From positions 181,129-221,426 of the forward strand of contig NW_003314396.1 of NCBI RefSeq assembly GCF_000143415.4: a stretch of 40,298 bases of DNA, read 5' to 3'. This document shows, piece after piece, positions 264-39,914 of the stretch. This DNA comes from Selaginella moellendorffii. Taxonomy: Eukaryota > Plantae > Lycopodiophyta. Position numbers and translations under genes: made by a program. The first letter of the stretch is position 1. Every line of letters begins with the position of its first letter. The notes under the pieces were generated by a model. It searched no databases. It saw only the letters and a list, made by a program, of their open reading frames with translations, and was not told the origin of the DNA.

Positions 264-400
264 GACTAGAATCAAGGTTCTTCACTCTCTTGCTCGTTGC
301 CATTCTTTTTTCGAGTCTCTCAAGTCCCTGTTTGTTCCAGGTTCTCGAGGCTGGAACCACGACTAGAATCAAGGTTTTTCACTCTCTTGCTCTTCGCTAT
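264..400. repeat. 97-bp tandem repeat (about 1.4 units) with internal hairpin GTTCCAG...CTGGAAC
   Basis: GACTAGAATCAAGGTT starts at 264 and again at 361; the same repeat recurs at 31921-32100. Confidence 0.85.
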
Positions 401-446
401 TCAACTGGAAATATGGTTTTGATCATGTTTTGCTGGGATCGTGCAG

Positions 447-933
447 GGACGTACATCTGGAGCAAGCCTGTGATGAAAGGAACGCACCCTTCTCCTCGGG
501 ACAGCCACAGCCCCACGGCCGTCGGGTCTAAGCTCTATGTGTTTGGTGGTACCGATGGAACCAGCCCGCTAGATGATCTCTTTGTTTTGGATACTGGTAA
601 GCGAGTTCTATCAAATTTTTTTTCTTGTTCTTATCATCCAATGCAGCTACCAACACCTGGGGGAAACCCGACGTTTTTGGTGATGTTCCTGCTCCGAGAG
701 AAGGACATAGCACATCTCTCATCGGTGACAACCTGTTAGTGTTTGGGGGATGTGGGAAATCCAGCGATCCCTCAGAGGAGGAGTACTACAACGACCTCCA
801 TGTTTTGAACATGAGTAATATCCTGTTATCTTTCCTGGTCGCCTATTCCTCGGGATATCCATAATAAGAACTGTTGCATTGTCATGGGTGGCGAGAACGG
901 TGGTAATGCCTATCTATACGACATTCATATTCT
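447..933 (+). pseudogene. Kelch-repeat protein gene fragment, internally deleted
   Basis: Exons ~447-596 (WSKPVMKGTHPSPRDSHS...LYVFGG) and ~647-814 (PAPREGHSTSLIGDNLLVFGG) joined by a GT-AG intron. The third repeat (IVMGGENGGNAYLYDIHIL) lacks an acceptor and part of its sequence. No 5' exons; runs into an N-gap. Confidence 0.8.
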
Positions 934-1262
934 NNNNNNNNNNNNNNNNNNNNNNNNNNNNNNNNNNNNNNNNNNNNNNNNNNNNNNNNNNNNNNNNNNN
1001 NNNNNNNNNNNNNNNNNNNNNNNNNNNNNNNNNNNNNNNNNNNNNNNNNNNNNNNNNNNNNNNNNNNNNNNNNNNNNNNNNNNNNNNNNNNNNNNNNNNN
1101 NNNNNNNNNNNNNNNNNNNNNNNNNNNNNNNNNNNNNNNNNNNNNNNNNNNNNNNNNNNNNNNNNNNNNNNNNNNNNNNNNNNNNNNNNNNNNNNNNNNN
1201 NNNNNNNNNNNNNNNNNNNNNNNNNNNNNNNNNNNNNNNNNNNNNNNNNNNNNNNNNNNNNN

Positions 1263-1545
1263 TATTTGCAAGAAGATTCGTGAGGAGAAAGCAGCCAGAA
1301 TCATCAAGCAGCTGGTAAAGACCTTCAAAGAGATTTATTTGAGGGGCGTGGTTCACCAGAATCTCAAGCTCGACAACATTCTTTCCAAGCTAAACATGCA
1401 TGACAAGTGGTGATCAGCACCTTTAGGAGATATCACAACAGCGAAGTACATGGCAGCTGAGTTGTTGGAGAACAAGGATTGGAGCTCTACATGGCAGCCA
1501 TCGAAATGTGGGGGCTAGGAGCAATTTTATACAAGACGCTGGGAA
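1263..1545 (+). pseudogene. Degenerate Ser/Thr protein kinase fragment
   Basis: GVVHQNLKLDNIL (subdomain VIb-like), KYMAAELL (VIII-like) and IEMWGLGAILY (IX-like), separated by a stop and frameshifts; no DFG. Confidence 0.7.
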
Positions 1546-8799: not shown

Positions 8800-9920
8800 T
8801 TTTCACAACAAGTTTGAGTCATAAAATCACGGACATCATGCAGCGATGGAGTTTGGTGGCCCTTCTGTGGAAATCTGCATTCATAGTTAAGTTCTTAAGC
8901 ACAATTCTCAGCAATGGAACTCTACCTCAGCTTCACAGAAATTGCTCAATGAAAAAGCAGCACTACTGAAAAACTTTATAAACTAAACGGCAAGGAATCG
9001 AGTGAGCATGCCAAGGAAAAGACTACACATACCTTGAGTGGTCATCACAGAGAGAGCAATAGGAGCGGCAGGAGACTGGACTGGTGCTGTATAGCATTTA
9101 AAAGGCTGCAAAATAGAGGTGAAGCACCAGACACCAAGAAAAAGAAAAAGAACTGAAAAAATGATCAAATGAACAAGCAAGGTAAGCCAGAAACTTGCTT
9201 AGAAATCTCTGCCGGCATGAACAACAAAGTTTCTTACCTTGTTACTACTACTGGTTGCTACTGAGACTTACAGCTTTGATTCTAAGCTGTGTCTTCTACA
9301 GCTTTTGTTTTTTCTCATGACCAACTTGAGCAAGAAAATCAAAAACATCATGCAGCAACCGAACCCGTGAGAAGTTGGTGACCCTTGTGCAGAAGCAGCT
9401 AAGTTCTCAAGTGTTGTGTCATAACTCTCAGGAATGGAGCTCTACCTCGGCTGCATTCAAAACTAAAGAATGATTGAAATCAGCAAACATGATGACAGAT
9501 GATGTACCTGCTCATAGAAGGTGTCCTTTTTTTTGTTGCACCAGTGCTACACACACTTTTGATGAGCATACTACCAAACACAAAAGAGAGAAAAAAAAAG
9601 AGAGGAAGAGCCAGAAACTCGCTTAGAACTCTCAGACGACACAGAGAACGTCCCTACCTTCAACCTGCCGCAACAAAAGCATGGGATTTCGGGATTCCCA
9701 GCCTCATCCTTTGCCTGCCAGATTCTACTTTCACCCTGCTGAGATTATAGTGATGGTGGCTTTGCAGAGTGATCCTTGTGATGGTGGTGATGCTGCTGAA
9801 CATGAAAAAACTGGTTTTGGATCAGCAGCAATGAGCTGGTTCCATTCTTATGGAAATGGGATTCGCCCAAACCAGCACCAAGTCTCTCGATGTCCATGTG
9901 TGGAGAACAAAGAACACAAC
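8800..9920. repeat. Two diverged tandem copies of a ~0.45-0.65 kb module
   Basis: Anchors AAATCAC/A..ACATCATGCAGC, AATGGA.CTCTACCTC.GCT and AGCCAGAAACT.GCTTAGAA occur in both 8800-9245 and 9260-9920. Confidence 0.75.
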
Positions 9921-11339
9921 CANNNNNNNNNNNNNNNNNNNNNNNNNNNNNNNNNNNNNNNNNNNNNNNNNNNNNNNNNNNNNNNNNNNNNNNNNNNNNN
10001 NNNNNNNNNNNNNNNNNNNNNNTCGCCATTCTCCCAAGGTTTAAACTCTACTCTCTACCAGGAAGTTTTCCCGAGCTCCTCCACCCAAGCTGTGATCCTC
10101 CACATACAGCCTAACCAGCAATTCACACAGCTTGTCTAGTGCAGAAGAAAGTGGTCATTCAAGTCCATTACTAATGTCAAATAATGTTGGAATTATCGAA
10201 GCATTCAAAACTGGATCAAAGTTTCTATTCAGTAACTGGCTCAGTAAGTTCTGCAGCACATGCAAGAGAATAGCCAGATGATTAACTGTAATTACAACCC
10301 ACATCTGAGCAGCATTCTTAGCTTTTGGTTCCAGAATGTTTTCTCACTTGGCAATATTGACATCAAGAGACATCACAACCTGTACATGAACAGTGGCACA
10401 TTCAATGCTCTGGGAGATATAGCATTTAAATTTATTAACTGATTAATAATACTTAGTAAGTGATTTATAAATTTACTGCTGGGATATATAGCATACCAAA
10501 GATAAATAGATCTTTTTTTCTAATTTTAAATTTTAGAAACATTTATTGTATAAAAGGTTAAATTTACCTAAACTTTTCTATTATTCATCTAGAGACTAAT
10601 GCACAATAATGCAATTAATGCAATTAGATAATGATGCATGTGTTAGGGAAAAGATCTTTATTTTATCATCATAAAATTTAAATTTGAATTTGTTTTTATT
10701 GCCTTTATAAATAGGTACACAACCCTAAACACATCCATGTTGTACCAAAGAATAATAGGTTTTGTAACTGGTTTGGTGAAGTTATAAATTTAATTGCATA
10801 CTGAGTTAACTTCTTTATTATCTAAACTGTAATGATGCCTTTAACATTCATAGTTTACTAAAGAATAATAGAATTATTATGTATCTTGTTTTGCATTTAA
10901 AAACATACACAAGTAAATTTATCCAGATTTCTACCACATTTATATTAAACCTCATAAGCCAGAAATAGAGAATGGTTCAATATTGAGAAATTATAAATTG
11001 ACAAAATCTAACAAATGTATAATAGTTCCTTGCAACACAAGAGGTAGTAAGATAATGTAATTTCTCTAAAAACGTTTTTATTATGAAATACTTTAAAAGA
11101 AATATTTGAGCTATAGTTATATAGTGTGTAAGAACCACTAAATGTTTCATACATTTTATATACATGAAAGAAAAACTGTCTCTTATTGGTTATTACTTTT
11201 GCCAAAAGTTTTGTTTTAGTGTTTTATGTATAAGGGATCTATAAAGTAAGCTGCTGATGCTTCTTTTTTACCTTTTTCTTTGTGTGTTGAGATTTGTTTT
11301 TATATAATAGATAAATAATATATATTTGTGGTTCTTACA

Positions 11340-17271: not shown

Positions 17272-19996
17272 CTAAACTTGATTAGTGTTTTCGGGGGAGT
17301 CATTTTGTTGCGTTCCCACTTCTTTTGATGCTAATTGCATTGAGCGGTGCATTTGTGATATCTTAGCTCGCAGAAGTACAGCTACAAAAACCAAGAGAAA
17401 AATAATTCCTCCCATAATCATAGGGTTCGTCAGCCACTCATATGTCACCCAAATGGCAGTTGGTGCTTTCTGTACGCATCAGAAGCTGTTGTAGCCAAAC
17501 AATCTAAAATTAAATACCTCAATGTAATTAGCGATAACCTGGTAACTGGACAGGCCTTCTTTCACAGGACCACATATACCACTGCTGGGGGATGTCAGCC
17601 TGAAGACAATAGGAATACTTGAAAGAATAAGCGTTATTAAGAGCAATCCGTAGGTTATATCCGAGGTGCTTGATGCACTGTATGCCTTTTCCATTGGCGC
17701 GCACGTTCTCATAAGTACTTCCTGGTGCCAGTTACCATTTACCAATCACCATTAATCTAAAGTATTTTCACTTCACCTTCAGTGATAAAAATGAAACGCA
17801 GTTGCAAATGGCTCCGAGTGTAGCTGCGATTGGACTAAACATAGAAGCGACCCATACAACTGCTTGGATATAAACCACCCGGATAGGCATATCTTCAATA
17901 GCCATTTGTTGTCTATGCTGCGCAGGAGGATAGGAAGTAATCGTCACATATGTATATGTAAAGCTTACCTTAAAGTAGTAAAGAACAAAATATCCCTTGG
18001 CTCCCTCCACTGCATTATCAATCAGCGTGCTGCTTATAATTAGCTCGAGAAGGAGCTTTGCAACAGCATTATCTGCACAGTCTGCTACGCAATAACCAAT
18101 CTGATATTGACAAGCAAAAGTCATTCATAAAATACAAAATACAAATCATACCTTAGAGGGCCTGCAAGTCGGCCAAACACTCTCATAAGCATCTTTTTCC
18201 AAACAACAAATCAGCCCATCCTTACATTTCCCAGAGTGACAAGCTTTCATGGAGCTTCCCTCTTTGGCCACTCGTGCCTGTTCAATAACAACATAAAGCC
18301 TGCCTGGTACAATTTAGCTCAACCAAATGAAGCAGATAACATACTCACCTATAAAACAATGTCCCTACATTCAACATTCGTATAAAATAGAGCTTCACAA
18401 GAAGTACTTGATCAGCTGTAGAGGGCTTCCAATCCTCCATTTGGACAAGCATCCGGATTAACCGTGGAGAAGAAATATTGACAGCTGCTAGAAGAAACGG
18501 TTGTGCAAAACCTTCCATAAAGCCTGGATAAATTAAAACGAACTTTTCTATCATCGGCTATTTTGAAACTTACGCAAGCTCGAGTCAATTGTAGCTTGCT
18601 TTGAAACAAGAAAGATAACAGCAGCAACAGTGCTAATCATAAGCAATGGAAATAGCAAAAAGAGAGCCACATTTCTCTGGAAGTATAATAACAGTTTCAG
18701 CAAGTACACTACAAATTCTTACTTTATAGAGCTTCTTTTTGTCCGTGGTTGCAATCTCTTGTTGAATTTCAGCACAGTCAGCTAGCATTTCATGAAGGCG
18801 CATTCTAATTCCTCGCTTCAGATTTGAGGACGACTACAAATACAGTAGTTGAGCCATCTAATACTAAATAAATCCTTACTTCTAAAGTGGTCAAATGAAA
18901 GTCCCAGTTTGCTAAAATTGCAGTTGCAAAAGGGTACCCAGCTCCGGTGTATGCATTTGTATAGTCACCAGATCCCATTATTCGAACTGCCATCCTGTAA
19001 CAAATTTTATTATTTAAAAAAAAAGAGACGCAGTTAATACCTTCCAAGAACAGCTGCCAATGTGACAAATAATGTCATCCCTATTATGACTGTATACATG
19101 TAGTCAGTCCTGTACCAACCTTTCTGTTCTCCGCTGGTGTAGTTATAGCCGCCATAGAAAAACCACGTAGAATCCAGATAGTGATCCTGCAAGAAGTTTA
19201 TTTACAAAGACAAAAAAAAATAATAAATGATTTACCTTCTTAGACTGTCTGGACTCCAACAAGTGCCAGCTGTATGAATCGGGAGGACGGGCAAAGAATG
19301 GAAAAACTATAAATACAATCCACATCGACGACAGAATGACGTTGAGCAAAAACACAAATCTCAGAAACTCAAAGGTCACCATAACTGCTGACCCAAACTT
19401 TCCTTCGATAGACTTTAGAGTGGACGTCCAAATCGAGAAGCTATCCTTATTCTATAAAAATAGACCTTGAATTGACATCACGCATCAATTATCACACTCA
19501 CTCGTTCAAACCAATCTTTTGCTTTGTCGAGTTTGTCAGGGTCCAAAACCTGTTGCATTCGGTCTTCTAGTAACGCCCATAACCCCTTGTTCTTCTTATT
19601 TTCTCGGACGTGGTCAAGACCAAGGAGTGTGATACGACCTTTTGCTTTGGCAGCGGCTCGTGATATCTACTTGGTTTTTCTCAAGTAAATGAGGGGATAT
19701 GATAGAAGGCATATATGGACCTGATACCGCTTTGTTGATTCTGCCGCCTCAGTAGTAGAAATGGTATCGAAGACTTCCTCTCGGGCATTGCCAACATTCT
19801 TGTTGTCATTCTTGAGTGCCATCGCCTCAAAAGGTTTAAGTGCTTAGGGTTGTCAGGTGACACGCAAATTCGGCAAACTTTGTTCGATGACAATAGTAAT
19901 CCTCTGGGTGTTCTACGGGCTATAAAGGGGATAAAAAAAGGTAAGCCGACACTTCCAATTACATGGCCACCTACGTCGCTCTTTAAAACTGTTCAT
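17272..19996 (-). CDS. Transmembrane channel-like (TMC family) protein, multi-exon
   Basis: Spliced exons give IWTSTLKSIEGKFGSAVMVTFEFLRFVFLLN, YLDSTWFFYGGY, ILANWDF, VVYIQAVVWVASMFSP, CAPMEKAYSAS and PSSGICGP. These are colinear with TMC hallmarks (IE..FG..V..YF.FLR, LFYG.Y, WDF, IY.Q...W.G..FSP, PS..CGP). No stops in the exons I read; start codon and last exon uncertain. Confidence 0.9.
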
Positions 19997-20321
19997 AGTT
20001 GCTAATTAAGCGTGTAGCACCTGGAAGTCCTGTGCAAGACATAACAGAACTCCCTTTAAAAGGTTTTGCCAAGCCTTAGAGAAAAAGAACGAATATGTGG
20101 TTTATTGATTTTGGCTTATCTATAGTATCACGGACATCTAGACTGGTCACTAAAAAAAGTCGAAGCAAACAACGCTAAATTTCCTCTCTAATATAAACTA
20201 AGATGAAATCCATCCCTGAACAACAATAAAGATCTGATATTGACAGTCTACTATAAGAAAATGAAGGGAAGTTTTAGGGCATGCTATTTTCTCTATAATG
20301 GTGCTGTTGTAGTGGCAAGAG
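19997..20321. promoter_or_regulatory. Short head-to-head intergenic region, putative bidirectional promoter
   Basis: About 325 bp between divergent candidate ATGs; several TATAA-like motifs. Confidence 0.45.
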
Positions 20322-22341
20322 ATGCGACTATTAACAGGACAGAAGGACATTCACGAAAACGAGAGCACGCTCATGCTACTTTCTCCTAGGTCCGTTCCTG
20401 GAGGATTGTCCTGCTCGTCGTCAAGAAGCTCTTGGGATTCATCTACATGTGAAAACTTTTGCCAAACAGATGGCTGCGAAAATGCTAAGGTTCTTCAAGA
20501 TCTGCCAGATCGCAAAAGCATTCAGGGTCCCGCAGTAGGTGCTAAAGCTAAAGAAAGCGGATCATTTCTTGAGCCTTTTCTTGGACAGAACTTGCTACAG
20601 TCCGTTCTTCCAAGCGCAGATGAAGTAAAATGTTAATGTTAATTTGCATTCATTCGTCATGTTAAATCTGTAGGGAGGACTTCAACAAAAAATATCACAG
20701 CTTAAAGTTGCATTCGACGCCTCTAACAGGTCGGTATAGAGAAAAAAAAATCCTTTCTCACTAAAGCAAGCCGCAGGGCACTTGAAGAAAGTGAAAACGA
20801 AACAGAAGCATTGCGGACCTATCTTTCCCATGTGGAATGTGGAGCTTCTAGCCTACATTTCCGTGTAAAAGAGCTTGAACAACTTCTTCAACTTGGTATC
20901 TTCCTTTAGTGTGTACCTAGTTCAGCCTAAATATTTTTATATCAGAAAAAGCTCAAGGCAACGAAGAACTCAACAAACTTCGGGGGAAGATTGTACTAGA
21001 TGCACAACAGGAAGCTCAGAAACAAGCAGCTGGTGCGGCTCATGCTGTGGTGGTAGCCCGTGAAGCAGCTATGGAAATGGACAAGGTAATAACAGGGAAG
21101 TTCGCAATGTTACTAAAATGAACGTGTACAGGTCAAACGACACTTTTCAGTGCTTGTAAAATCACAAGAAGATGAGATTCTCCGGTTGTGCAAAGACGTC
21201 GATAATACTCGTGTTCTGTATCAGGTAAATCTTATTTTGCATAGCAGTTCAATGGTTGTCCATATAAGCAGGCAAAATCTGGCATGGTGAAGCCTCTGAA
21301 ACAACGGATACATGAGCTGGTATTGTAATCCATGTACATGTTACACAATCGTGAAAACATGTGATATAGGAACTATGCTTGTGTCTTCAGTCCCAAAAAG
21401 CAGACGCTGAAACAGAAGGAATACAACTTGAAAAACTGCAGGTGAATACTGAATTTCAAATTGGCTCTAATGCGACTTTGTTTACAGCTAATAACTAAGA
21501 AAAAAGAAAGTGAATTTTGCAAGATAAAGGAAGCCCTTGACACATCCAGCAGAACAGCAACAGCTTTAGATGACCGATTAAAGCTTCTGGAGAGCGAGAA
21601 ACAGGATCTTATGGTGCGGAATGTGGTTCTTGAACAACAGGTACCATTTTTCGGCGAAGATCTGCTTCCTGGTCATAAGTACAGCGGACTTTCAGGTGAA
21701 AAAATTACAACACCAGCAGATTATGGCAACTATTTCACATTATGATTTTGAGCTCCATAAAGTAATTGTGCACTTCATTTTTTACTCTCGCACATAATCA
21801 GAGCATACAGGTCCGGGCAGTGCTGGGTGGCGAGAAAGCACATTTACTCTCTGATCTGGTATGTCTGGTATCTTTCCGGTATTAATGAAGCTTCTTACCA
21901 GGCTCTTCTTCGCTCTCGAAACAAATGCCTTCGAGGTGACCTTCAAGAGTGGCAGGAGAAGTACATGGCTCTTAGTCACCATGCTGGGATGGAGACAATT
22001 TCAAACTCAAAAGAGCATAATCTAGTTGAAGACACGTACTGGGATGTTAAAATAACACATGCCGAAGGAAAGATGCAGGATTCCTTTGAAAATGATTTCA
22101 GGGACACTACACACAATTATAAAAGCGACACAGCAGTCCACAGCTGCAACAGAAATTGTAGTTCTTGCGAGGCCAAAGAGAGTATTCTTACCGCAGCCCA
22201 TAGAGAAATTATGAAACTCAACGAGGTGAGATTTTTACTACATGTTCCTAAGTGTTAATGTTGTTGATGCAGATAAATCAATGGTTGATTTCAGCTTGTC
22301 ATAACGACATAAAATTGAAGAGCCTCCCAAAACGTTACTAA
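20322..22341 (+). CDS. Uncharacterised coiled-coil protein, multi-exon
   Basis: Short GT-AG introns join heptad-rich exons (LQQKISQLKVAFDASNRALEESENETEALR; LDDRLKLLESEKQDLMVRNVVLEQQ). Last exon 22273-22341 ends in TAA. Confidence 0.75.
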
Positions 22342-22659
22342 ATGTAGTCAATGTATTTGACTCTTTCCACAGTTCGGTGTATTCTCTAGCACTTTCTTCC
22401 TCGAGACACCTTTGAAAGCTATACACCAGACTCCCATTACTAGTTCGTATTGCATGTGTTAAACCAGCAGATCTTATATTTTTGAATTGGCCTTAAGACT
22501 CGTTATAACTTCTTCGAAGTTCTTGTATTACGCGACCGTTGTAAATTAGCTAGATTTTAGGGCTCATCCGCACATTACTTAGTGCGGCTGGCTCTAGTTC
22601 TTAGATTCCATTGTGTTATGCATTTTGACCTACCCTGACTTCTTTCGTTGTCTCATTCT

Positions 22660-25600
22660 ATGAATTCTTCTCATGGAAACCATGATAACCAAATCAATGA
22701 GAACGGAATTGAGGGTAGAAGGAACAGCGAAAGAAGAATATCGCAGCTCTTGGACAGAGTCAATGGAAGAAGATCTTCCCAGCAGGAAACCAATGTTGAG
22801 TCATTAACTCCACTCTCCAAGACCACCTCAGTAGAGAATGGTACAAGAATGTCAATGCCAACAGAGGATGCTATTAAAGCTTCAGAAGATGTTGGTGGAG
22901 GTCCGGGGAATGCACAACTACTCGTTAATGAAGATTTTAGCAACAATAGCGATCTCTTCGGACGTGACATAGATGGTAGACAAGAAGCTCCTCAAACAGA
23001 CAATAACGCAGATACAGGTGCCACATCTCAAGTAGCTTTGGAAAATGCCAGGAAAAGCAGTACATTTAATGCGCCTTTGATGATTCCAGAAATTTCGGGA
23101 AGAAGTAGTGCTCTTGATCCTCTAAATAATGAGAACGTTTCAAGGAGAATTAGCACAGAATCTACGAGTGATATTGCCACAACTTCGAATGTTCCCCAGC
23201 ATGAAGCAAGGATACCTGATAGACCTCAAGAGTCATATGACATAGTAAGAAACGAAATTTCACAGGCCGAGGTATTATTAACGGACATCGTCAACCAAGT
23301 TTCTATGTCAGCTCTCACAAGGCCGGCCAGTGATGATGCTTCTGTAGTTACACAGGAAAAAATGGCTAGTCGCCCAGAGGCTTTAAGAAAACCAGCTTCT
23401 TTGGATGAAGCACCACTAAGTTCCAAAGTACCTGATCTCGCTACAAGGCTGGATGGCAATGTAGAGTACGCTGGAAGAACATCCCGGCGGCAATGGGGAA
23501 GCATAAGGGGCTTGTCCAAAGATTCTTCTGTCGAAGACTCTAGTACTGGGGACATTGAAGGTGAATACATTACGGACCTTATGAAGAAAAGAAGATCTAA
23601 TAAAGAGAACCAAATTCGTGATGCCATGCAACAAGGGATTCTAGGAAGCTCCGGTGTGCCAGATTTTCATGCTCGGCTTTTGGTTGGTGTTTCGTTTTTT
23701 TAATACATGCTTTTGTACTTCCGCAGTTTTTATAGGCTCTGAGATTGGCCGTTCAAGATTACGAGCTTCCTATGCAACTTGCCTATGACGAACTTGATGA
23801 GCTTGCAGCCAATGCTGAGCGCGTAAGAAGCGCCATTGAAAAAAACATGACGCTGCTAACCATTCAGGTTAGCCTGCTCATTTGACTTCCACGGAAATTG
23901 ATACTCTAGTTTAAAGATGAGAAGAAGCAGTCTAAGATATATGAGATCTGCTTTTATGGCATTGACACTACACAAGGGAAGAAAAATTGCAAGAAGGTTT
24001 GCTATGAAGAATGCTGCTGAATACTTTCAACGACGGATGCTGGGACGAGCTTTTCAAGCGTGGAAAATTTTTTTTTTGCGCATGGAAAAGTTCAAAAGAT
24101 TGCAGCAGTCAGCGGAAAAATTCTTGCGACGTCATAATATTGCACGTATTTGGTAGTAGCTATCATTGATCTAGAATGCTCCTAGATCTGTTACTGTTCG
24201 TGCAGGAGAGCTTGGAGATCCCTTGTAAAGCGAAGACAAAGGGAAGATGAACGACATAGGTACTTTCCTTATTTACCTTGTTAACCTGTCAAGTATATAC
24301 AGGAGAGAAAAGCAATTAGTCCGCGATTTGCAAGTAAAACAAAGGGAGTGCATAGGACGAAGAGCTGTTAATGCTATACGGAGAAGACGGTTGCAAAGGG
24401 TTCTGTTTGCTTTCAAGGTTCTTACAAGGCACATCTGTTCTCTTGCTCCATTAGAAATTAGCAATTAGCATCACTGCAGGTTGGTGTACAAATTAGTAGA
24501 GCTGTTGACGAGCGCAGAGATCACATTTTTTACCTTCTTTTAAGACGAAAGGCGGCCCTGGCTTTTAAATTCTGGCAGAGATACCCAGCTAACAGGTTCT
24601 TTCTTAAACAGTAATATTCATGGCCTAACTTAAATTTTAGAGCACGTCACTTTCGAGCAATACAAAGGGGTGAAAGGAAAGTTCTCTCCAAATGTTTTTG
24701 GTTGTGGGAGGATGAAACTGCATTTTCAAGATATTGGAAAAGGAGAATACAAAAATGTAGACTTGCGAGTGCATTCGGACTATGGATGCGTTTCGTGGTG
24801 CAGAAATCAAGATATGACACAATTTTTGTCAGATTGGTCCGATCCCGCTTACGAAGGCAATTTGATGAGCTACATGAAATTTGCTTGGAGGAGAAGTGGA
24901 AAAGTAGGACCTGTAAACGCATTAAAAGAAAATGTGAAGACATAAAAATAAGATGGACTTTTCAGGCCTGGATTTGCTACATGCAGGTTAAAATGTTATT
25001 TCAATTATTGTAGGCTGACCCTTTATGTAGGTACAATCACACAAGAGGATGCTTAAAGTCGAGGAGCACGTTGCAATTCTTGAGAAAGAGAACCAACGGA
25101 CTAGAACGGAATATGACAGACTAGGACGCATTGTTGATACTGGCGAGTGGGATCAACAACGTGTGTTGGAACTTGAGCAGGCAAGGCATGTGTTATCTGG
25201 AGAACGAAACGCCCTGACAAAGCTCATTGGTCGTCTTGAGAGAGAGCATGCTATGGCTGTGAAATACCAGAACCAACAGGAGCAAGAGATCAAGCTTCTC
25301 AAAGATCAGATGCTAAACAGCGTAAAACAGCTGTTTTTAATAGACAAAAACACTGGTTTTTATTTTTTCTAACAGAACTTTGTACACCGAAATAAGTTGC
25401 TGGTTAGAGGGGCATCAAGTTTCAACTCTGTGGTTCGGGCTGTTAAGTCTGAGGTATCCAGTCTTGTTCTGAGATTTTTAAATAATAATTTTTTTTTTTA
25501 TCTCTGTAGGTTCTTAAAAAAGGAGTCAATCCGGAAGTCATTTACTCCGTAGACAGAATGGCCATGGACCAGGTAAAGGTTTGAATTTTAGACCACATCT

Positions 25601-25746
25601 TATTTTCTTTTCTGCAGGTATCAGTATTTCCGGATGGGGATCTACACATCCAACCTTTGAATAAGTTTGACAGAAGAAAGTGGATGCATAGGGAGTCCAC
25701 AGACACTACTAAGGCATTTATTATGGAGAATCATAAAGTTATCTGA
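22660..25746 (+). CDS. Sfi1-repeat (centrin-binding-like) protein with disordered N-terminus and coiled-coil C-terminus
   Basis: A ~1-kb S/N/D-rich first exon, then repeats AAEYFQRRMLGRAFQAWK, AEKFLRRHNIARIWRAWR, KAALAFKFWQ, RLASAFGLWMR and IRWTFQAW that fit A-x7-LL-x3-F-x2-W. Last exon 25618-25746 ends in TGA. Confidence 0.8.
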
Positions 25747-27300
25747 AGTGTGTTCTTTGAGCAACATATTTGATGAACTCTGGAGAAGAAATGAGTTAAG
25801 ATGGACGAAATAGGAAATTTCTAATTGGTCCATCTCAAAGCCTCAAAAGGTTCGCAATTGACTTTTCAGGTATTACATTTGCTATTAAGTAAAACAGGGA
25901 CAATGACAAAAAAATTCTTTGCAATCGTGTGGGTTCAAACTAAAGCCTTTGAAATTTTAGTAAGGGCAAACCAAAAGGAATTAAATTGATATAAGATAAT
26001 TGTAGTACACAAAAATGGCAGTGCTGAATGATCAGGGAAGACTATACAATTGCAGATGAGGAGTTTTCTTGGTATGACTGGAGCCTTTAGAAAGTGTATC
26101 AAGCCTTATGCCATTTCTGGAAAACACAGAAAAGCATGCATCGATTATTTGGTTAGAATGTCAACAAGTTTCTTTTCACTGTATGTGTAGTTGACTACAT
26201 CGATACTAAAGGTTTCGGATCTCAATGCCTCAATTTTGGTGGAATTGGATGTGCTAATGACGATGCTTCTTGTTTTAAGAAAATCATATAGTGGCTTTCA
26301 TTAAAGTTTGGTACTTCGCAATTTAATTTCCTCCTGTCATTAGTGCTCTTAAACATACTTATATGAGGCTGAGTTAATCCTGTGGAAGACGGCAAGCACT
26401 ATCTTGATCCATTCACGAGTGAGTTGGAAAAGGACTTAGGCTAGATATATCAATCCAGTCAAATTGACAAAGTGCGAGAAGAAATTTTTGCTGTAAGTTT
26501 AGAAAGACAAAGAGTGGAAGAAATCTCAGTTAGATGGATTCTCTCAGCCACACTGATTTCCAACATTTTAAAAGCTGGAACATGGATCTTTGGGACTTTC
26601 TCATTCATCTGCAAGTAAGCATTATATGACTATATTCTCCTCTTTGCAAAGGGCAAAGGTTAGCTCACAAGAGAATGGAAAAACCTGGTATATCAACAGC
26701 TTTACTTGTTTTATACGTCTGGTCATCTGAAAATATTGAGGTCTTTGAAAAGGGTCTTAAGAAGAATCATTCCACAACTAGAGCAACACTGTTATGATTA
26801 TAATAAGCAAAATTCATAGAAAGGCATAACTTCACATGTGTGACCAGTTTCTTCCAGTTGCTGGGCTGTTCAAACAGCTCTCCCGTCTGGTTTTCATTGA
26901 TTCCGGATATAATTGAAGGGAAGACAGTTGCTTGTGATTTTTTCTCAAAACAAGGAAGATAATCATCTTGAGGTCTTATAAAACTTCAGCAACAGTTTAT
27001 TGGTTAGAACTGCAATGCTGGCGATGGCTGTTGTGGATATACAAGAATTCCAGTAAATAAGTTGCATCTTGCCAAAGATTGGTTAAGGGGATTAACTTTT
27101 AAAATTTCAAATCCAAGATTCTCTTAATACCAAGACCATCATAGCCTGATATTTATGTCGCCCCAAGATGATCTTTTTATAGGGAATGAAACTAGTGCGA
27201 ATCATGGAAGGTAAAGAGGAATCTCTTTATATACGAAAAACAGTGTTGAAGATTTATTCACCGTTTGCCGGGATCATACAGTGTTTCAATAAGTAATCCT

Positions 27301-27919
27301 TTATTTTTCTGGACTATCTGTCATAGCTGCCAGAATCTTTAGCATGCACTCGACCATAGGCACCGAAGATGCATAAGGCTGCGCTCGCTCACAGACCTAC
27401 CATACAATTTTAGAGCACTTCATTTAAGATATAACAACCTTCTCCATTCGGGTGAGCTTGCCATAGTAGAACAGGCGCTCCTTGTTAAGAACATCAACCT
27501 AATAAAATTACAAATATCTCATGATTCTAAAAGACAAAACACTCACCTCTGCTAAGAGCTCGGCGTATGATTGTAAGCGAACCAACAACTCACCTTCCAG
27601 GTAACTTAATTAATGTCAAGTTTAGTTTGGATATGCTAAAGTATCATACTTACGAAGCCAAACTCTCCAATACAGCTTGTTGCTGAACTGCATTCTCGTC
27701 AAAACATTCATTTTGCATAGAGGCAGGAGGGCAGTCACTAGCAACTATAGCTACACCAGCAGCTTCTCCCTTTCCGCCTCTAGACTTATTATTAATCTTT
27801 CCACGCCCTAACTTCCAGACATTCCCATCCCCTCGGCTGCGCCTCTGTGGTGATGGGCGATGGAGCACAATACCACGCCCTGCATTGCGCCTGGGCGATG
27901 CCACTGGCCTGCGCTCCAT
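27301..27919 (-). CDS. ~160-aa protein with EB1 C-terminal (EBH) domain and no CH domain
   Basis: Four phase-compatible exons: basic disordered N-terminus, then YLEGELLVRLQSYAELLAE / VDVLNKERLFYYGKLTRMEK / VCERAQP...PMVECMLKILAA. This matches EB1 'VD.LEKERDFYF.KLR.IE..CQ...P.V..I.KIL.A'. Confidence 0.8.
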
Positions 27920-30735: not shown

Positions 30736-30942
30736 TCATCAATCATCATACTCATATATTTAAACGAAAGAGCCCGTATAATAATAGCATATACTGGGGA
30801 CACTTATTCTGGGCATATGCCAAAATCTAACGGCTGAGATTAGACAATGTAAAGTTGTGACTTTTGGGATCATAAAAATTTTCAATTGTCTTTTAGGGTG
30901 CGTGACCACAAGGAGAGAGCATCGATCATCGCTTGTGGGAAG

Positions 30943-31039: not shown

Positions 31040-31920
31040 TTGATGGAACGATTTAGAAGGCTACAGTCAGCTGTACATGATGCCACTGGTTGGTTCATTC
31101 TCAGAGTTCAAAAGCTCACGCACCGGAAAATGACACCAACGCCGAAGCGTTCTTCAACAGGAGATATGCCACTGGNNNNNNNNNNNNNNNNNNNNNNNNN
31201 NNNNNNNNNNNNNNNNNNNNNNNNNNNNNNNNNNNNNNNNNNNNNNNNNNNNNNNNNNNNNNNNNNNNNNNNNNNNNNNNNNNNNNNNNNNNNNNNNNNN
31301 NNNNNNNNNNNNNNNNNNNNNNNNNNNNNNNNNNNNNNNNNNNNNNNNNNNNNNNNNNNNNNNNNNNNNNNNNNNNNNNNNNNNNNNNNNNNNNNNNNNN
31401 NNNNNNNNNNNNNNNNNNNNNNNNNNNNNNNNNNNNNNNNNNNNNNNNNNNNNNNNNNNNNNNNNNNNNNNNNNNNNNNNNNNNNNNNNNNNNNNNNNNN
31501 NNNNNNNNNNNNNNNNNNNNNNNNNNNNNNNNNNNNNNNNNNNNNNNNNNNNNNNNNNNNNNNNNNNNNNNNNNNNNNNNNNNNNNNNNNNNNNNNNNNN
31601 NNNNNNNNNNNNNNNNNNNNNNNNNNNNNNNNNNNNNNNNNNNNNNNNNNNNNNNNNNNNNNNNNNNNNNNNNNNNNNNNNNNNNNNNNNNNNNNNNNNN
31701 NNNNNNNNNNNNNNNNNNNNNNNNNNNNNNNNNNNNNNNNNNNNNNNNNNNNNNNNNNNNNNNNNNNNNNNNNNNNNNNNNNNNNNNNNNNNNNNNNNNN
31801 NNNNNNNNNNNNNNNNNNNNNNNNNNNNNNNNNNNNNNNNNNNNNNNNNNNNNNNNNNNNNNNNNNNNNNNNNNNNNNNNNNNNNNNNNNNNNNNNNNNN
31901 NNNNNNNNNNNNNNNNNNNN

Positions 31921-32100
31921 AGGTTCTTCACTCTCTTGCTTGTCGCTATTCTTCTTTCGGGTCTCTCAAGTCCCTGTTTGTTCCAGGTTCTCAAGGCTGG
32001 AACCACGACTAGAATCAAGGTTTTTCACTCTCTTGCTCTTCGCTGTTCTCTTTCGAGGCTTAAAGTTCCTGTTTGTTCCAGGTCCTTGAGGCTGGAACCA
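31921..32100. repeat. 97-bp tandem repeat, same family as 264-400
   Basis: AGGTT.TTCACTCTCTTGCT at 31921 and 32018; the array abuts an N-gap and may be longer. Confidence 0.85.
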
Positions 32101-36733: not shown

Positions 36734-37034
36734 GCTTGCGCTATTGGTGAACAACCGATCAAGGTAGATTGAAAATTCTTTACTTTTTTCTGAAGACAAT
36801 TTGCAGGGACTGCTGAATCCTGCAGCTATGGCTAGGCTGGCGCTTGGAGAAGCTTTGACGAATCTTGTTTGGGCTAAGGTACTCTCATCTTAATTGTGTT
36901 TACACACCTTATGATCTGTTTAACTTTGCAGGCTGAACTTGATTCCGACATATATGTACAATCCTGCTGTTGCTCTTCGTGACACTATGATCGAGCTTGA
37001 GGTTGCAATAGAAGGTGGAAAGGACAGCTTGTCA
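36734..37034 (+). pseudogene. PUR4: Phosphoribosylformylglycinamidine (FGAM) synthase (PurL/PUR4) internal fragment
   Basis: ACAIGEQPIK | GLLNPAAMARLALGEALTNLVWAK | ...MYNPAVALRDTMIELEVAIEGGKDSLS with two GT-AG introns. The SGNWM segment is missing and there are no upstream exons. Confidence 0.88.
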
Positions 37035-37869
37035 NNNNNNNNNNNNNNNNNNNNNNNNNNNNNNNNNNNNNNNNNNNNNNNNNNNNNNNNNNNNNNNNNN
37101 NNNNNNNNNNNNNNNNNNNNNNNNNNNNNNNNNNNNNNNNNNNNNNNNNNNNNNNNNNNNNNNNNNNNNNNNNNNNNNNNNNNNNNNNNNNNNNNNNNNN
37201 NNNNNNNNNNNNNNNNNNNNNNNNNNNNNNNNNNNNNNNNNNNNNNNNNNNNNNNNNNNNNNNNNNNNNNNNNNNNNNNNNNNNNNNNNNNNNNNNNNNN
37301 NNNNNNNNNNNNNNNNNNNNNNNNNNNNNNNNNNTGATACTTGCCTGGACGTTGAAATATTTAAAACGTGCCTCCAATGCGATGCAGGTGATCATGTCAT
37401 TCATTGGTTCTCTTTTTTTAAAAATCTGGATTTTTCTGCGGACAGGACCTTATTGGCAAGAAACTTATTTCTGCAGGACATAATATCGAAGTTACAGTTT
37501 CATTGCTAGAAATGTCTTTGCGAGCAATTGTGGCATTGAAGTAGACATTCCCACTTCATGAACAGGACAATCTAAGCATATCCATGGCAGGAGATATTGC
37601 TACAGAAGTCGTTGATGAGACCACTGAACCATTAGAATCACAAACAGATCAAGCATCAACTGAAAGTGCAGTCAAAGACGTGTTCACAACCTTGAGCTTC
37701 AGGTAATCTCTTTCCCTGCTTCATTGTAAGAGAGCGCCAGTGCTGCAAATTTCTTCTGTAACTTTTCCACCTTATACACTAGGGATGTATGTAAAAGCCA
37801 AGAAGTGGAGAAAATTCCTGAAGAGGTTGCCAAGTTCCCTCTTGAGTACCACAGGTCTCAACAGAGGCA

Positions 37870-38190: not shown

Positions 38191-39914
38191 AGGAGAGCTC
38201 AGTACTTTCAGATAGTAACAAACATCAAGTTGTTCCGTGCGACTTCATTGGAATCATCAAAAGACAGCAATCAGTGATTTTGAGAAGTAAGACAATTGTT
38301 ATTACTCTCGTTACCACAGGCTGATGGTTCATTCAGATGAGATTGTCAGTAAATTTTTATAACAAATGACGAGTTTATATGCCCAAGCAGACATATTTGC
38401 TTATGGCAAGGTCAGTAAGGAATCTATCATGTTCTTTCATGGTCTAAATGTTTCTTTCTTCATATCCCCGAGGAACCTCGGTGTTCTGGATTATTTGATT
38501 CCTCATAGAGTAAGTTCCTGAAGGTTCTTTCCTTGCAACTCTACAGTTACCTTGTTCTTGCAGACTTTCACAGGAAACCGTCCATCCCTAAGTGTGCTGT
38601 ATTATAGATCCAGATTACAAATGATCAAATCCAGATTTTGATTTGATATCAAGTGATGTTATCAAATTATCATCTATGTGCTGTTATCTTCAAAGATGTA
38701 GGCAATAACAGCATCAATGCAGGGAAGAATGCTGTATCCGCCATAAGGGTGTAAGTTTTGGAAAGCACTGTCATAGTTGCTCAAGAAAGAGAAAGAGATT
38801 GAAAACAATATAGGAAAACTCATGCATATGTACCATCATTCCCGCCCAGCAAGTGTCTGGTAAATCTGAGAGAAAAGCTTTCACACTCCCNNNNNNNNNN
38901 NNNNNNNNNNNNNNNNNNNNNNNNNNNNNNNNNNNNNNNNNNNNNNNNNNNNNNNNNNNNNNNNNNNNNNNNNNNNNNNNNNNNNNNNNNNNNNNNNNNN
39001 NNNNNNNNNNNNNNNNNNNNNNNNNNNNNNNNNNNNNNNNNNNNNNNNNNNNNNNNNNNNNNNNNNNNNNNNNNNNNNNNNNNNNNNNNNNNNNNNNNNN
39101 NNNNNNNNNNNNNNNNNNNNNNNNNNNNNNNNNNNNNNNNNNNNNNNNNNNNNNNNNNNNNNNNNNNNNNNNNNNNNNNNNNNNNNNNNNNNNNNNNNNN
39201 NNNNNNNNNNNNNNNNNNNNNNNNNNNNNAACTAACTTGAGTTCCTTCAACTCAATCATGAAGTAGACTGTCTCTCAGTTTCTCCGAGTGCCCAAGTCAG
39301 CTTGCAGGGAGTCTTGTGATGCTACAAATATTAAACCTGGTGAATCAATCCTCTTAAGAGTGCCTTGGCTGGGAATTGAGTAGCATGTGCATGGCCTTGC
39401 CACCAGTTTTCACCATCTATGCTCGGGACTACAAGCAAAAACTTTGTTAGCTTCTTCTCAGAGATGAAAGAAAAACTCAAGCTACCTTCTGCAGTTCCAT
39501 AGAGAAAAAGGACAAACCACATGTCATACAAATGGTAGATAGCTTATAAAAATTTGAGATTAGAATTTATGCTAGGGTCCTCCCATGATAAATTTAAATA
39601 ACGATATTAAAAAAATTAAAAACTTTCACAATAATCTTAATAAATTCAAATAATACAGCTTTTTAATTATTGATAATGTAGCTACTGAATAGTTATATTA
39701 CTATTACAGCAATATTAATGACATGCTTTGGAAATTAGGATTAGAGCAGTAACAAAACAAAGTGGAATTTTGTCATACATGATGACATTTTCACACTTTA
39801 ATGACAATACAGATTTACTTCATATTTTAAGCAAAGAAACTCTACTATATCATTCACCACTATAGTGTTCAGAAAATAATAATAATGTCACTAAAAATCA
39901 CTATTTTATAATAC

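What the first reader, a model, noticed from the sequence alone, without database searches (positions are those of the whole stretch)
17272..19996. Apparently intact TMC-family channel in a plant genome
Seen: TMC hallmark motifs in order across spliced exons. Established: TMC1/2 are pore-forming subunits of animal hair-cell mechanotransduction, and Arabidopsis is known for OSCA, MSL and PIEZO rather than TMC. Inference: a TMC retained in a flagellate-sperm plant lineage, with function unknown to me, possibly in sperm mechano- or chemosensing.
Basis: partly seen in the sequence, partly recalled or inferred. Interest (0 to 1): 0.7.

Follow-up and report, generated by a model that had tools for sequence, protein, structure and literature searches.

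The report
Known spikemoss TMC channel-like gene
This is an intact gene for a TMC-family membrane protein in the spikemoss Selaginella moellendorffii; it is real and under selection, but it is already in the databases and literature, and its proposed role in swimming sperm remains untested.

Summary
Confirmed. A 13-exon gene on the minus strand (CDS 19822 to 17272, all GT-AG, introns 46-55 nt) encodes a 651-aa protein with ten membrane-spanning segments. Eleven of the 13 exon peptides are exact substrings of GenBank EFJ06494.1 (SELMODRAFT_430643), so the window is Selaginella moellendorffii.

It belongs to the TMC family, not OSCA/TMEM63 or anoctamin:
- The deposited protein passes Pfam PF07810 (30.3 bits, cut-off 25).
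- A profile of plant orthologues hits C. elegans TMC-1 at E=6e-53, with no TMEM16 or OSCA hit.
- Predicted folds match TMC-1/2 best (Z about 30 against about 24).

Both haplotype alleles are intact, with pN/pS about 0.2.

It is not new. Erives & Fritzsch (2020) and Wu et al. (2022) already report the Selaginella TMC.

- The deposited gene model is wrong at TM5 and lacks the last exon (TM10).
- Ferns (Adiantum, Ceratopteris) also carry TMC, in two paralogue clades, which contradicts the implied loss in ferns.
- No seed-plant hit appeared in four searches.

The sperm-function idea fits this distribution but is untested: three RNA runs gave no reads. Another first-stage note (s1-349051) covers this same stretch.

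The parts
17272..19822 (-). Whole coding region of the S. moellendorffii TMC gene (allele SELMODRAFT_430643): 13 exons, 651 aa
   Evidence: GT-AG model with no internal stop; exons 1-7 and 9-12 are exact substrings of P0016 (EFJ06494.1); the other haplotype is also intact, pN/pS 0.20.
19721..19822 (-). Exon 1: start codon and poorly conserved N-terminus
   Evidence: Identical to the start of P0016.
19502..19666 (-). Exon 2: basic cytosolic N-terminal helix (AKAKxRI motif shared with plant orthologues)
   Evidence: Alignment; tblastn.
19236..19451 (-). Exon 3: conserved pre-TM1 motif (W..LK.IEGKFGS.V..F.FLR) and TM1
   Evidence: phmmer hit to C. elegans TMC-1 7USW residues 151-196, E=7.5e-5, and to TMC-2 8TKP, E=0.02. 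Hydropathy.
19041..19186 (-). Exon 4: YGGY..EQ.GWYRTDYMY loop and TM2
   Evidence: tblastn with the Diphasiastrum and Sphagnum orthologues.
18880..18994 (-). Exon 5: first half of intracellular loop 1 (YPF....NWDFH motif)
   Evidence: The family profile matches the mouse TMC1 peptide 6WUD_B here, E=8e-4.
18723..18833 (-). Exon 6: second half of intracellular loop 1 (LKRGIRM.L.E.LAD)
   Evidence: The acceptor at 18833 was chosen because SSSNLKRGIRM aligns with AATKLRRGIRM of the orthologues. It agrees with the deposited model.
18574..18676 (-). Exon 7: TM3
18349..18523 (-). Exon 8: TM4, EDWKP loop and most of TM5. The deposited model wrongly splices out the last 19 residues.
   Evidence: the tail VLLVKLYFIRMLNVGTLFY aligns with VVLTKLFFLRVLNLGAFAY of Diphasiastrum. 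The only haplotype difference in that tail is synonymous.
18152..18299 (-). Exon 9: end of TM5 and a cysteine-rich extracellular loop found in all the plant sequences
   Evidence: nearly invariant Cys columns across all plant orthologues. Short strands are predicted there.
17969..18100 (-). Exon 10: TM6 and the start of the Pfam TMC domain. The signature is degenerate (CADNAVAK instead of the plant consensus C.EN.VG.Q or the nematode CWET.IGQE).
   Evidence: exon 10 plus in-frame intron plus exon 11 gives PF07810 at 22.4 bits, E=1.9e-4. Consensus and the alignment.
17777..17917 (-). Exon 11: TM7 and TM8, the core of the TMC domain
   Evidence: PF07810 positions 50-90, E=7.9e-4. Hydropathy.
17518..17721 (-). 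Exon 12: SAS.TS motif, TM9 and the conserved CGP motif
   Evidence: hit to 7USW residues 770-833, E=2.1e-3, and to 8TKP, E=0.037.
17272..17469 (-). Exon 13: TM10, C-terminal tail and stop codon. This exon is missing from the deposited protein model.
   Evidence: aligns with the C-terminal TM10 of all full-length orthologues. All three haplotype differences in it are synonymous in this frame.

Best explanation
The window carries one haplotype allele (SELMODRAFT_430643) of the single TMC gene of the lycophyte Selaginella moellendorffii. This gene is an intact, vertically inherited member of the eukaryote-wide TMC family and is kept under purifying selection.

Shown: the gene structure, the family membership, the ten-helix TMEM16-superfamily fold closest to nematode TMC-1/2, the intact state of both alleles, and a distribution restricted to non-seed green plants and some green algae.

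Inferred by analogy with animal TMC1/2 and the nematode TMC-1 structure: the protein sits in a membrane as a dimer, and each protomer conducts cations along a groove lined by TM4-TM7. I put this channel reading at about 0.5, a lipid-scrambling or regulatory non-channel role at about 0.3, and something else for the remainder.

The conserved intracellular loop 1 is the region that binds CIB-type EF-hand proteins in animals, so it may bind an EF-hand partner here. The cell type is unknown. My best single guess, at about 0.25-0.3, is wall-less flagellate cells (spermatozoids).
For: Identity:
- Eleven of 13 exon peptides are exact substrings of EFJ06494.1.
- Introns of 46-55 nt are typical of this genome.

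Family:
- PF07810 is above its cut-off in the deposited protein (30.3 bits) and in all nine other plant relatives scanned (36-64 bits). No Anoctamin or RSN1_7TM hit appeared at E<=0.1.
- The plant-family profile hits TMC-1 7USW at E=6e-53 over nearly its full length, TMC-2 at 8e-44 and the TMC1 peptide 6WUD_B at 8e-4. No TMEM16, OSCA or TMEM63 chain appeared at E<=1.
- Single exons hit 7USW at colinear positions.
- Animal TMC8 and beetle TMCs were recovered at E=6e-15 to 5e-20.

Fold:
- The Diphasiastrum orthologue model gives Foldseek E=8e-15 for TMC against 2e-5 for TMEM16.
- VIA gives Z 30.4-30.7 for TMC (rmsd 3.3-3.9 A over 383-425 residues), against 23.8 for TMEM16F, 23.7 for TMEM63B and 22.6 for OSCA1.2.
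- The model of the deposited Selaginella protein gives Z 24.5 for TMC-1 against at most 18.2 for the others.

Selection: there are 27 exon differences between the haplotypes, 16 synonymous and 11 not, so pN/pS is 0.20. Both alleles are open.

Vertical descent: the gene tree recovers lycophytes (95/99), ferns, and mosses plus liverworts.
Against: - There is no expression evidence at all. Three RNA runs gave zero reads, about 12% of each run was read, and the organism's presence in them was not verified.
- Single exons fall short of Pfam's cut-off.
- The TM6 signature motif is degenerate in Selaginella, and its branch in the tree is long.
- The AlphaFold models are only moderate to poor (mean pLDDT 59.7 and 51.1).
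- No plant TMC has been shown to conduct ions, and pore-residue conservation was not established here.
Confidence: 0.9

Rival explanations
1. One reading: the plant TMC works specifically in flagellate male gametes or zoospores, as a mechano- or chemosensory cation channel, and was lost when seed plants gave up swimming sperm. This concerns the site of action and is compatible with the family assignment.
For: - All plant hits come from lineages with flagellate cells: Coleochaete, Sphagnum, Marchantia, Riccia, Calypogeia, Selaginella, Diphasiastrum, Adiantum and Ceratopteris.
- No seed plant appeared in four searches.
- The ferns contradict the published cell-wall explanation, which implied loss in ferns and seed plants.
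- Among fungi, the same paper finds TMC only in Rozella and Blastocladiomycota. From general knowledge both make flagellate zoospores.
- Zero RNA reads in three runs is weakly in line with restricted expression.
- By their titles and abstracts, animal TMC7 and TMC5 act in sperm development.
Against: - No expression or localisation data exist.
- Coccomyxa has TMC but, from general knowledge, has no flagella.
- A Pfam screen that included Chlamydomonas found TMC only in Selaginella and Coccomyxa among plants. The fungal list does not include chytrids.
- Many genes unrelated to sperm share a 'lost in seed plants' profile.
- My searches missed known positives (Physcomitrella, Klebsormidium, Coccomyxa), so absences are soft. 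Ginkgo and cycads were not tested.
Confidence: 0.27
2. The protein has a general, non-gamete role: a membrane-tension or osmotic sensor, or an endomembrane protein like animal TMC6/8, in vegetative cells. It was lost in seed plants for other reasons, such as redundancy with the expanded OSCA family or incompatibility with rigid walls, as Erives & Fritzsch proposed.
For: - The cell-wall hypothesis is published (PMC7003098).
- The OSCA family is about four times larger in green plants than in animals (PMC12806904).
- Coccomyxa keeps TMC without flagella.
- The closest animal hits to the lycophyte query were TMC8.
Against: Ferns keep TMC and have even duplicated it. From general knowledge, both ferns and Selaginella have lignified walls. 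No reads were found in three RNA runs of this species label (unverified).
Confidence: 0.4
3. The gene is a decaying relic: an open reading frame that survives by chance and is no longer used.
For: No RNA support. Degenerate TM6 signature and a long Selaginella branch.
Against: - All 13 exons are open in both haplotypes.
- pN/pS is 0.20, with only synonymous differences in the two regions that the deposited model missed.
- All splice sites are canonical.
- The invariant family residues are retained.
Confidence: 0.05
4. The gene is really an OSCA/TMEM63 or anoctamin family member, or an animal contaminant or horizontal transfer, mislabelled as a plant TMC.
For: All three families share one fold, so the structural Z scores for TMEM16, TMEM63 and OSCA are also high, at 22-24.
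Against: - No Pfam Anoctamin or RSN1_7TM hit, and no TMEM16 or OSCA chain in the profile search of the PDB at E<=1.
- TMC leads by about 7 Z units and nine to ten orders of Foldseek E-value.
- The gene tree follows plant phylogeny.
- The introns are Selaginella-sized, and the gene is present in both haplotype scaffolds.
Confidence: 0.01

Closest known systems
C. elegans TMC-1 and TMC-2 (PDB 7USW/7USX/7USY, 8TKP) and mammalian TMC1/2
   Same: Colinear homology over nearly the whole protein (family profile E=6e-53 and 8e-44). Ten-helix fold with the best structural match (Z about 30.5). Shared pre-TM1 motif, intracellular loop 1, TMC domain and the CGP motif after TM9.
   Different: - Only 19-22% identity.
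- Much shorter: 651 aa against 1203-1285 aa, with no long N- and C-terminal extensions.
- The long TM5-TM6 stretch of the worm protein is replaced by a compact loop with seven cysteines that are conserved across the plant sequences.
- The TM6 signature is degenerate in Selaginella.
- Partner subunits (TMIE, CIB/CALM-1) and channel activity were not examined.
Published single-copy Viridiplantae Tmc clade (Erives & Fritzsch 2020, PMC7003098; Selaginella EFJ05970 in Wu et al. 2022, PMC12806904)
   Same: This is that gene. The window carries the second haplotype allele, EFJ06494.1. EFJ05970.1 is the allele on scaffold GL377710.1.
   Different: The deposited 589-aa models skip part of TM5 and lack the last exon with TM10; the corrected product has 651 aa. 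The clade also includes ferns, in two paralogue groups, which the 2020 paper implied had lost the gene.
OSCA/TMEM63 and anoctamin/TMEM16 (same Pfam clan, CL0416)
   Same: Same overall transmembrane fold (Z 22-24).
   Different: No sequence-profile match and clearly lower structural scores. The roughly 180-aa intracellular TM2-TM3 region described for OSCA is absent; here exons 5 and 6 encode 75 aa at that position.

Membership tests
TMC (transmembrane channel-like) family | Pfam TMC domain PF07810 at or above the gathering score of 25 bits | tested here: met
   The deposited proteins of this locus and of its allele score 30.3 bits. The eight other plant relatives scanned score 36-64 bits. Single exons taken by reference reach only 20.4-22.4 bits because the domain spans exons 10-12. 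The joined model was not scanned.
TMC (transmembrane channel-like) family | Colinear full-length homology to experimentally defined TMC proteins | tested here: met
   The plant profile A2 hits 7USW in two stretches (37-414 to 82-470, and 446-684 to 667-929), E=6e-53. Exons 3 and 12 hit 7USW on their own. Animal TMC8 and insect TMCs appear at E=6e-15 to 5e-20.
TMC (transmembrane channel-like) family | Ten-helix TMEM16-superfamily fold that is closest to solved TMC structures | tested here: met
   Orthologue model: TMC Z 30.4-30.7 against at most 23.8 for the other families; Foldseek 8e-15 against 2e-5. Deposited Selaginella protein model (low confidence): 24.5 against at most 18.2. Nine strongly hydrophobic segments plus an amphipathic TM4 were found in the window's exons.
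TMC (transmembrane channel-like) family | CWETxVGQE-type signature at the start of TM6 | tested here: inconclusive
   The plant consensus keeps C.EN.VG.Q. Selaginella has CADNAVAK, keeping the Cys and an acidic residue but not the Gly or the Gln.
TMC (transmembrane channel-like) family | Conserved intracellular loop 1 (the CIB-binding region of TMC1) | tested here: met
   Profile positions 241-286 match the mouse TMC1 peptide chain 6WUD_B at E=8e-4. The motif is present in exons 5-6. Binding itself was not tested.
TMC (transmembrane channel-like) family | Ion conduction or mechanosensitivity, and the partner subunits TMIE and CIB | not testable with these tools
   Needs electrophysiology or reconstitution.
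OSCA/TMEM63 | RSN1_TM / RSN1_7TM Pfam domains and a large intracellular TM2-TM3 region | tested here: not met
   No such Pfam hit at E<=0.1 in ten plant TMC proteins. No OSCA or TMEM63 chain at E<=1. The loop encoded by exons 5 and 6 is 75 aa, against the roughly 180 aa described for OSCA.
Anoctamin/TMEM16 | Anoctamin Pfam domain PF04547 | tested here: not met
   No hit at E<=0.1. No TMEM16 chain in the profile search. Structural scores are lower than for TMC.

The most novel reading that the evidence does not exclude
TMC is an ancestral channel of wall-less flagellate cells. On this reading, plants use it only in spermatozoids or zoospores, for mechano- or chemosensory calcium entry. It was then lost together with motile gametes in seed plants, and in parallel with flagellum loss in most fungi. 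The published distribution data, which were explained by cell walls, together with the new fern hits would then be a phylogenetic footprint of that role.
Probability: 0.25. Interest if true: 0.7.

Novelty: already known. Interest (0 to 1): 0.25.

Why it matters
As a gene discovery it is ordinary: the Selaginella TMC is already in GenBank, UniProt and two papers. Three things remain useful.

1. A corrected 651-aa gene model restores TM5 and TM10. Anyone modelling or expressing this protein needs it.
2. Ferns keep TMC, in two paralogue clades. This moves the inferred loss to the seed-plant stem and undercuts the published cell-wall explanation.
3. No function is known for any plant TMC. Marchantia has a gene, Mp8g02240, that could be knocked out; the published survey (PMC7003098) describes one copy per plant. 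That makes the sperm-channel idea cheap to test. If it holds, hair-cell-type channels would be linked to an ancient role in flagellate cells.

Tried and rejected
- RNA evidence: the look-up of sequencing runs found no RNA holder. Read laying on 3,501 letters, within the 6,000 limit, gave zero reads in three RNA runs and one unspliced genomic contig. Splicing and expression therefore rest on homology only.
- Single exons: exons 8 and 10-11 gave nothing against PDB sequences, and most exons gave nothing in Pfam.
- First gene model: my first acceptor for exon 6 was 18 nt too far downstream. I corrected it from the orthologue alignment.
- Word-index searches: these scored only 8000 candidates each. 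They missed the published Physcomitrella, Klebsormidium and Coccomyxa genes, so their blanks are soft.
- False hit: a bacterial FN3 protein (P0003) in the representative search had 21 short stretches and was set aside.
- Unnamed hits: the ENA and Logan fragments could not be assigned to organisms. The tree places them with Selaginella, ferns, mosses or algae.
- Neighbouring gene: it is divergently transcribed, a roughly 1060-aa coiled-coil protein at about 20.3-26 kb on the plus strand. It has no Pfam family, and the Atlas gave only a faint Sfi1 lead at 0.76.
- Literature: searches for Mp8g02240, the SELMODRAFT ids, and TMC with antheridia found nothing beyond the two papers.
Exons were searched one by one by reference, and database proteins (P0016, P0004) stood in for folding. 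The exons were concatenated only inside scripts, to check frame and stops and to count synonymous and nonsynonymous differences.
- Pore-residue mapping onto mouse TMC1 was not attempted, because no mouse sequence was available from a tool.
Full report
**What is there.** The minus strand between 19822 and 17272 carries a 13-exon gene. I read the exons from the six-frame ORF list and the sequence and checked them by script. All twelve introns are GT-AG and 46-55 nt long. The CDS is 1956 nt (651 aa) and has no internal stop. The acceptor of exon 6 was moved 18 nt upstream after comparison with orthologues, because SSSNLKRGIRM aligns with AATKLRRGIRM. The start codon is at 19822, and the ORF listing shows no earlier in-frame start in that exon.

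**Whose gene it is.** An exhaustive HMMER search was run with the stop-free stretch 17768-18124, which is exon 10, an in-frame intron and exon 11. It gave 15 hits. The best, at 98% identity, is EFJ05970.1 / UniProt D8TBJ2, 'TMC domain-containing protein' of Selaginella moellendorffii. Its cluster mate is EFJ06494.1, SELMODRAFT_430643. Eleven of my 13 exon peptides are exact substrings of EFJ06494.1. The window is therefore S. moellendorffii and carries that allele. EFJ05970.1 is the other haplotype allele, on scaffold GL377710.1.

**Errors in the deposited model.** The two exons that do not match, 8 and 13, differ because the deposited 589-aa models are faulty:
- They splice out 19 residues of TM5.
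- They replace the last exon, which holds TM10 and the C-terminal tail, with a short read-through.

The versions in my model align along their whole length with orthologues from Diphasiastrum, Sphagnum, Riccia, Marchantia, Coleochaete and a second Selaginella-like sequence.

**Is the gene alive?** I aligned the window with the other haplotype.
- Exons differ at 27 of 1956 positions, and introns at 12 of 587 positions plus 8 indel columns.
- Of the exon differences, 16 are synonymous and 11 are not, which gives pN/pS of about 0.20.
- The only difference in the restored exon 8 tail and all three differences in exon 13 are synonymous in my frame.
- Both alleles are open.

This argues for a gene under constraint. 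Expression could not be shown. No indexed RNA run holds the stretch. Three raw RNA runs of the same species label gave no reads, with about 12% of each run read and the organism's presence in them unverified. The one holder was a colinear, unspliced contig, which means genomic DNA.

**Family membership.**
- *Pfam.* Exon 11 alone matches Pfam TMC positions 50-90 (E=7.9e-4, 20.4 bits). Exons 10-11 together reach 22.4 bits. Both are below the 25-bit cut-off because the domain runs over exons 10-12. The deposited proteins of this locus reach 30.3 bits and eight other plant relatives reach 36-64 bits. None has an Anoctamin or RSN1_7TM hit.
- *Solved TMC sequences.* Exon 3 alone hits C. elegans TMC-1 (7USW residues 151-196, E=7.5e-5) and exon 12 hits residues 770-833 (E=2.1e-3), so the hits are colinear. 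A profile of 19 plant sequences hits 7USW at E=6e-53 in two stretches that cover nearly the whole protein. It hits TMC-2 (8TKP) at 8e-44 and the mouse TMC1 peptide 6WUD_B at 8e-4. No TMEM16, OSCA or TMEM63 chain appears at E<=1.
- *Animal relatives.* Lycophyte and fern queries recover mammalian TMC8 (6e-15) and beetle TMCs (5e-20).
- *Fold.* An AlphaFold2 model of the complete Diphasiastrum orthologue has mean pLDDT 59.7, with 70-87 in the membrane core. It matches TMC-2 and TMC-1 best. Foldseek gives 8e-15 for TMC against 2e-5 for TMEM16 and 2.5e-3 for TMEM63. VIA-align gives Z 30.4-30.7 for TMC (rmsd 3.3-3.9 A over 383-425 residues), against 23.8 for TMEM16F, 23.7 for TMEM63B and 22.6 for OSCA1.2.
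- *Fold of the Selaginella protein.* The model of the faulty deposited protein is poor (pLDDT 51.1) but gives the same order: Z 24.5 for TMC-1 against at most 18.2 for the other families.
- *Topology.* Hydropathy of the exon peptides gives nine strong hydrophobic segments plus the amphipathic TM4, consistent with ten helices.

**How it differs from animal TMCs.**
- It is compact: 651 aa against 1203-1285 aa for the two nematode proteins.
- The loop between TM5 and TM6 is a short module with seven cysteines that are nearly invariant in all plant sequences.
- The TM6 signature is weakened in Selaginella. It reads CADNAVAK where the plant consensus is C.EN.VG.Q and the nematode has CWET.IGQE.
- Selaginella sits on a long branch in the tree.

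**Distribution.** Named hits come from these groups:
- a charophyte (Coleochaete) and a trebouxiophyte (Asterochloris);
- mosses (four Sphagnum species);
- liverworts (Marchantia polymorpha Mp8g02240, M. paleacea, Riccia, Calypogeia);
- lycophytes (Selaginella, Diphasiastrum);
- ferns (Adiantum capillus-veneris, A. nelumboides, Ceratopteris richardii).

A maximum-likelihood tree recovers lycophytes (95/99), two fern paralogue clades, and mosses plus liverworts, with animal TMC8 outside. This indicates vertical descent plus a duplication in ferns, and it does not fit contamination or transfer. No seed-plant protein appeared in any of the four searches. These absences are soft, because the same searches missed the published Physcomitrella, Klebsormidium and Coccomyxa genes.

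**What was already known.** Erives & Fritzsch (G3 2020, PMC7003098) describe a single-copy Tmc in Coccomyxa, Klebsormidium, Marchantia, Physcomitrella and Selaginella. They explain its absence from 'ferns, gymnosperms and angiosperms' by increasingly rigid cell walls. Wu et al. (Plant Genome 2022, PMC12806904) use EFJ05970 as 'Selaginella TMC' and report TMC in 'a few lower plants'. The finding is thus a rediscovery.

The fern genes found here contradict the implied loss in ferns and move the loss to the seed-plant lineage. The 2020 paper never mentions flagella. Yet its own list (Rozella, Blastocladiomycota, Naegleria, non-seed plants) is, from general knowledge, enriched for organisms with flagellate cells. 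Exceptions run both ways:
- Coccomyxa, Fonticula and Capsaspora have TMC but no flagella.
- Chlamydomonas and chytrids have flagella, but no TMC is reported for them.

**Mechanism.** Shown: membership, fold, constraint and distribution. The rest is inferred from animal TMC1/2 and the nematode structures: a dimer in which each protomer conducts cations along the TM4-TM7 groove. I put that at about 0.5. I put a scramblase-like or regulatory role at about 0.3. The conserved intracellular loop 1, which matches the TMC1 peptide of entry 6WUD, suggests an EF-hand partner; this is inference and was not tested.

**Surroundings.** About 500 nt upstream, a large coiled-coil gene is transcribed in the opposite direction (about 20.3-26 kb on the plus strand; 1060 aa in the other haplotype's annotation). 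It has no Pfam family. Its repeated AF..W motifs recall Sfi1 repeats, but the Atlas lead is faint, at 0.76. An earlier first-stage note (s1-349051) reads 17272-27919 as a sperm-apparatus island. I could not confirm that.

**Verdict.** This is a real, intact and correctly recognised TMC gene that is already known. Its interest lies only in the corrected model, the fern extension and a testable functional hypothesis.

Noticed in passing
window 20300-26000 (+): A large coiled-coil gene is transcribed in the opposite direction, head-to-head with the TMC gene and about 500 nt from its start. It is annotated as 1060 aa on the other haplotype and has no Pfam family. Repeated AF..W motifs around 23917-25013 recall Sfi1 centrin-binding repeats, but the Atlas score is only 0.76.
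   Followed up: partly
window 18017-18299 (-), exons 9-10: The plant TMCs share a compact extracellular loop between TM5 and TM6 with seven nearly invariant cysteines (C..C..G..CC....C....C...C). C. elegans TMC-1 has a much longer stretch at this position. Its function is unknown.
   Followed up: partly
GenBank EFJ06494.1 / EFJ05970.1 compared with window 18349-18407 and 17272-17469: Both deposited 589-aa protein models of this gene are mis-spliced. Nineteen residues of TM5 are removed, and the last exon (TM10 and tail) is replaced by a short read-through.
   Followed up: yes
P0006, P0029, P0028, P0032 (Adiantum, Ceratopteris): Ferns have at least two TMC paralogue clades, whereas the published account describes TMC as single-copy in plants and implies its absence from ferns.
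   Followed up: partly
window 900-1280, 9920-10020, 31170-31950, 37030-37330, 38800-39230: Several runs of N (assembly gaps) explain the apparent very low GC values in the composition profile. A (GA)n/(TC)n microsatellite lies near 30900.
   Followed up: no
window 290-739 (+): An ORF fragment with Kelch repeats (PF24681 at 51.9 bits, PF01344 at 31.2 bits), probably an exon of a Kelch-domain gene at the window's start.
   Followed up: no
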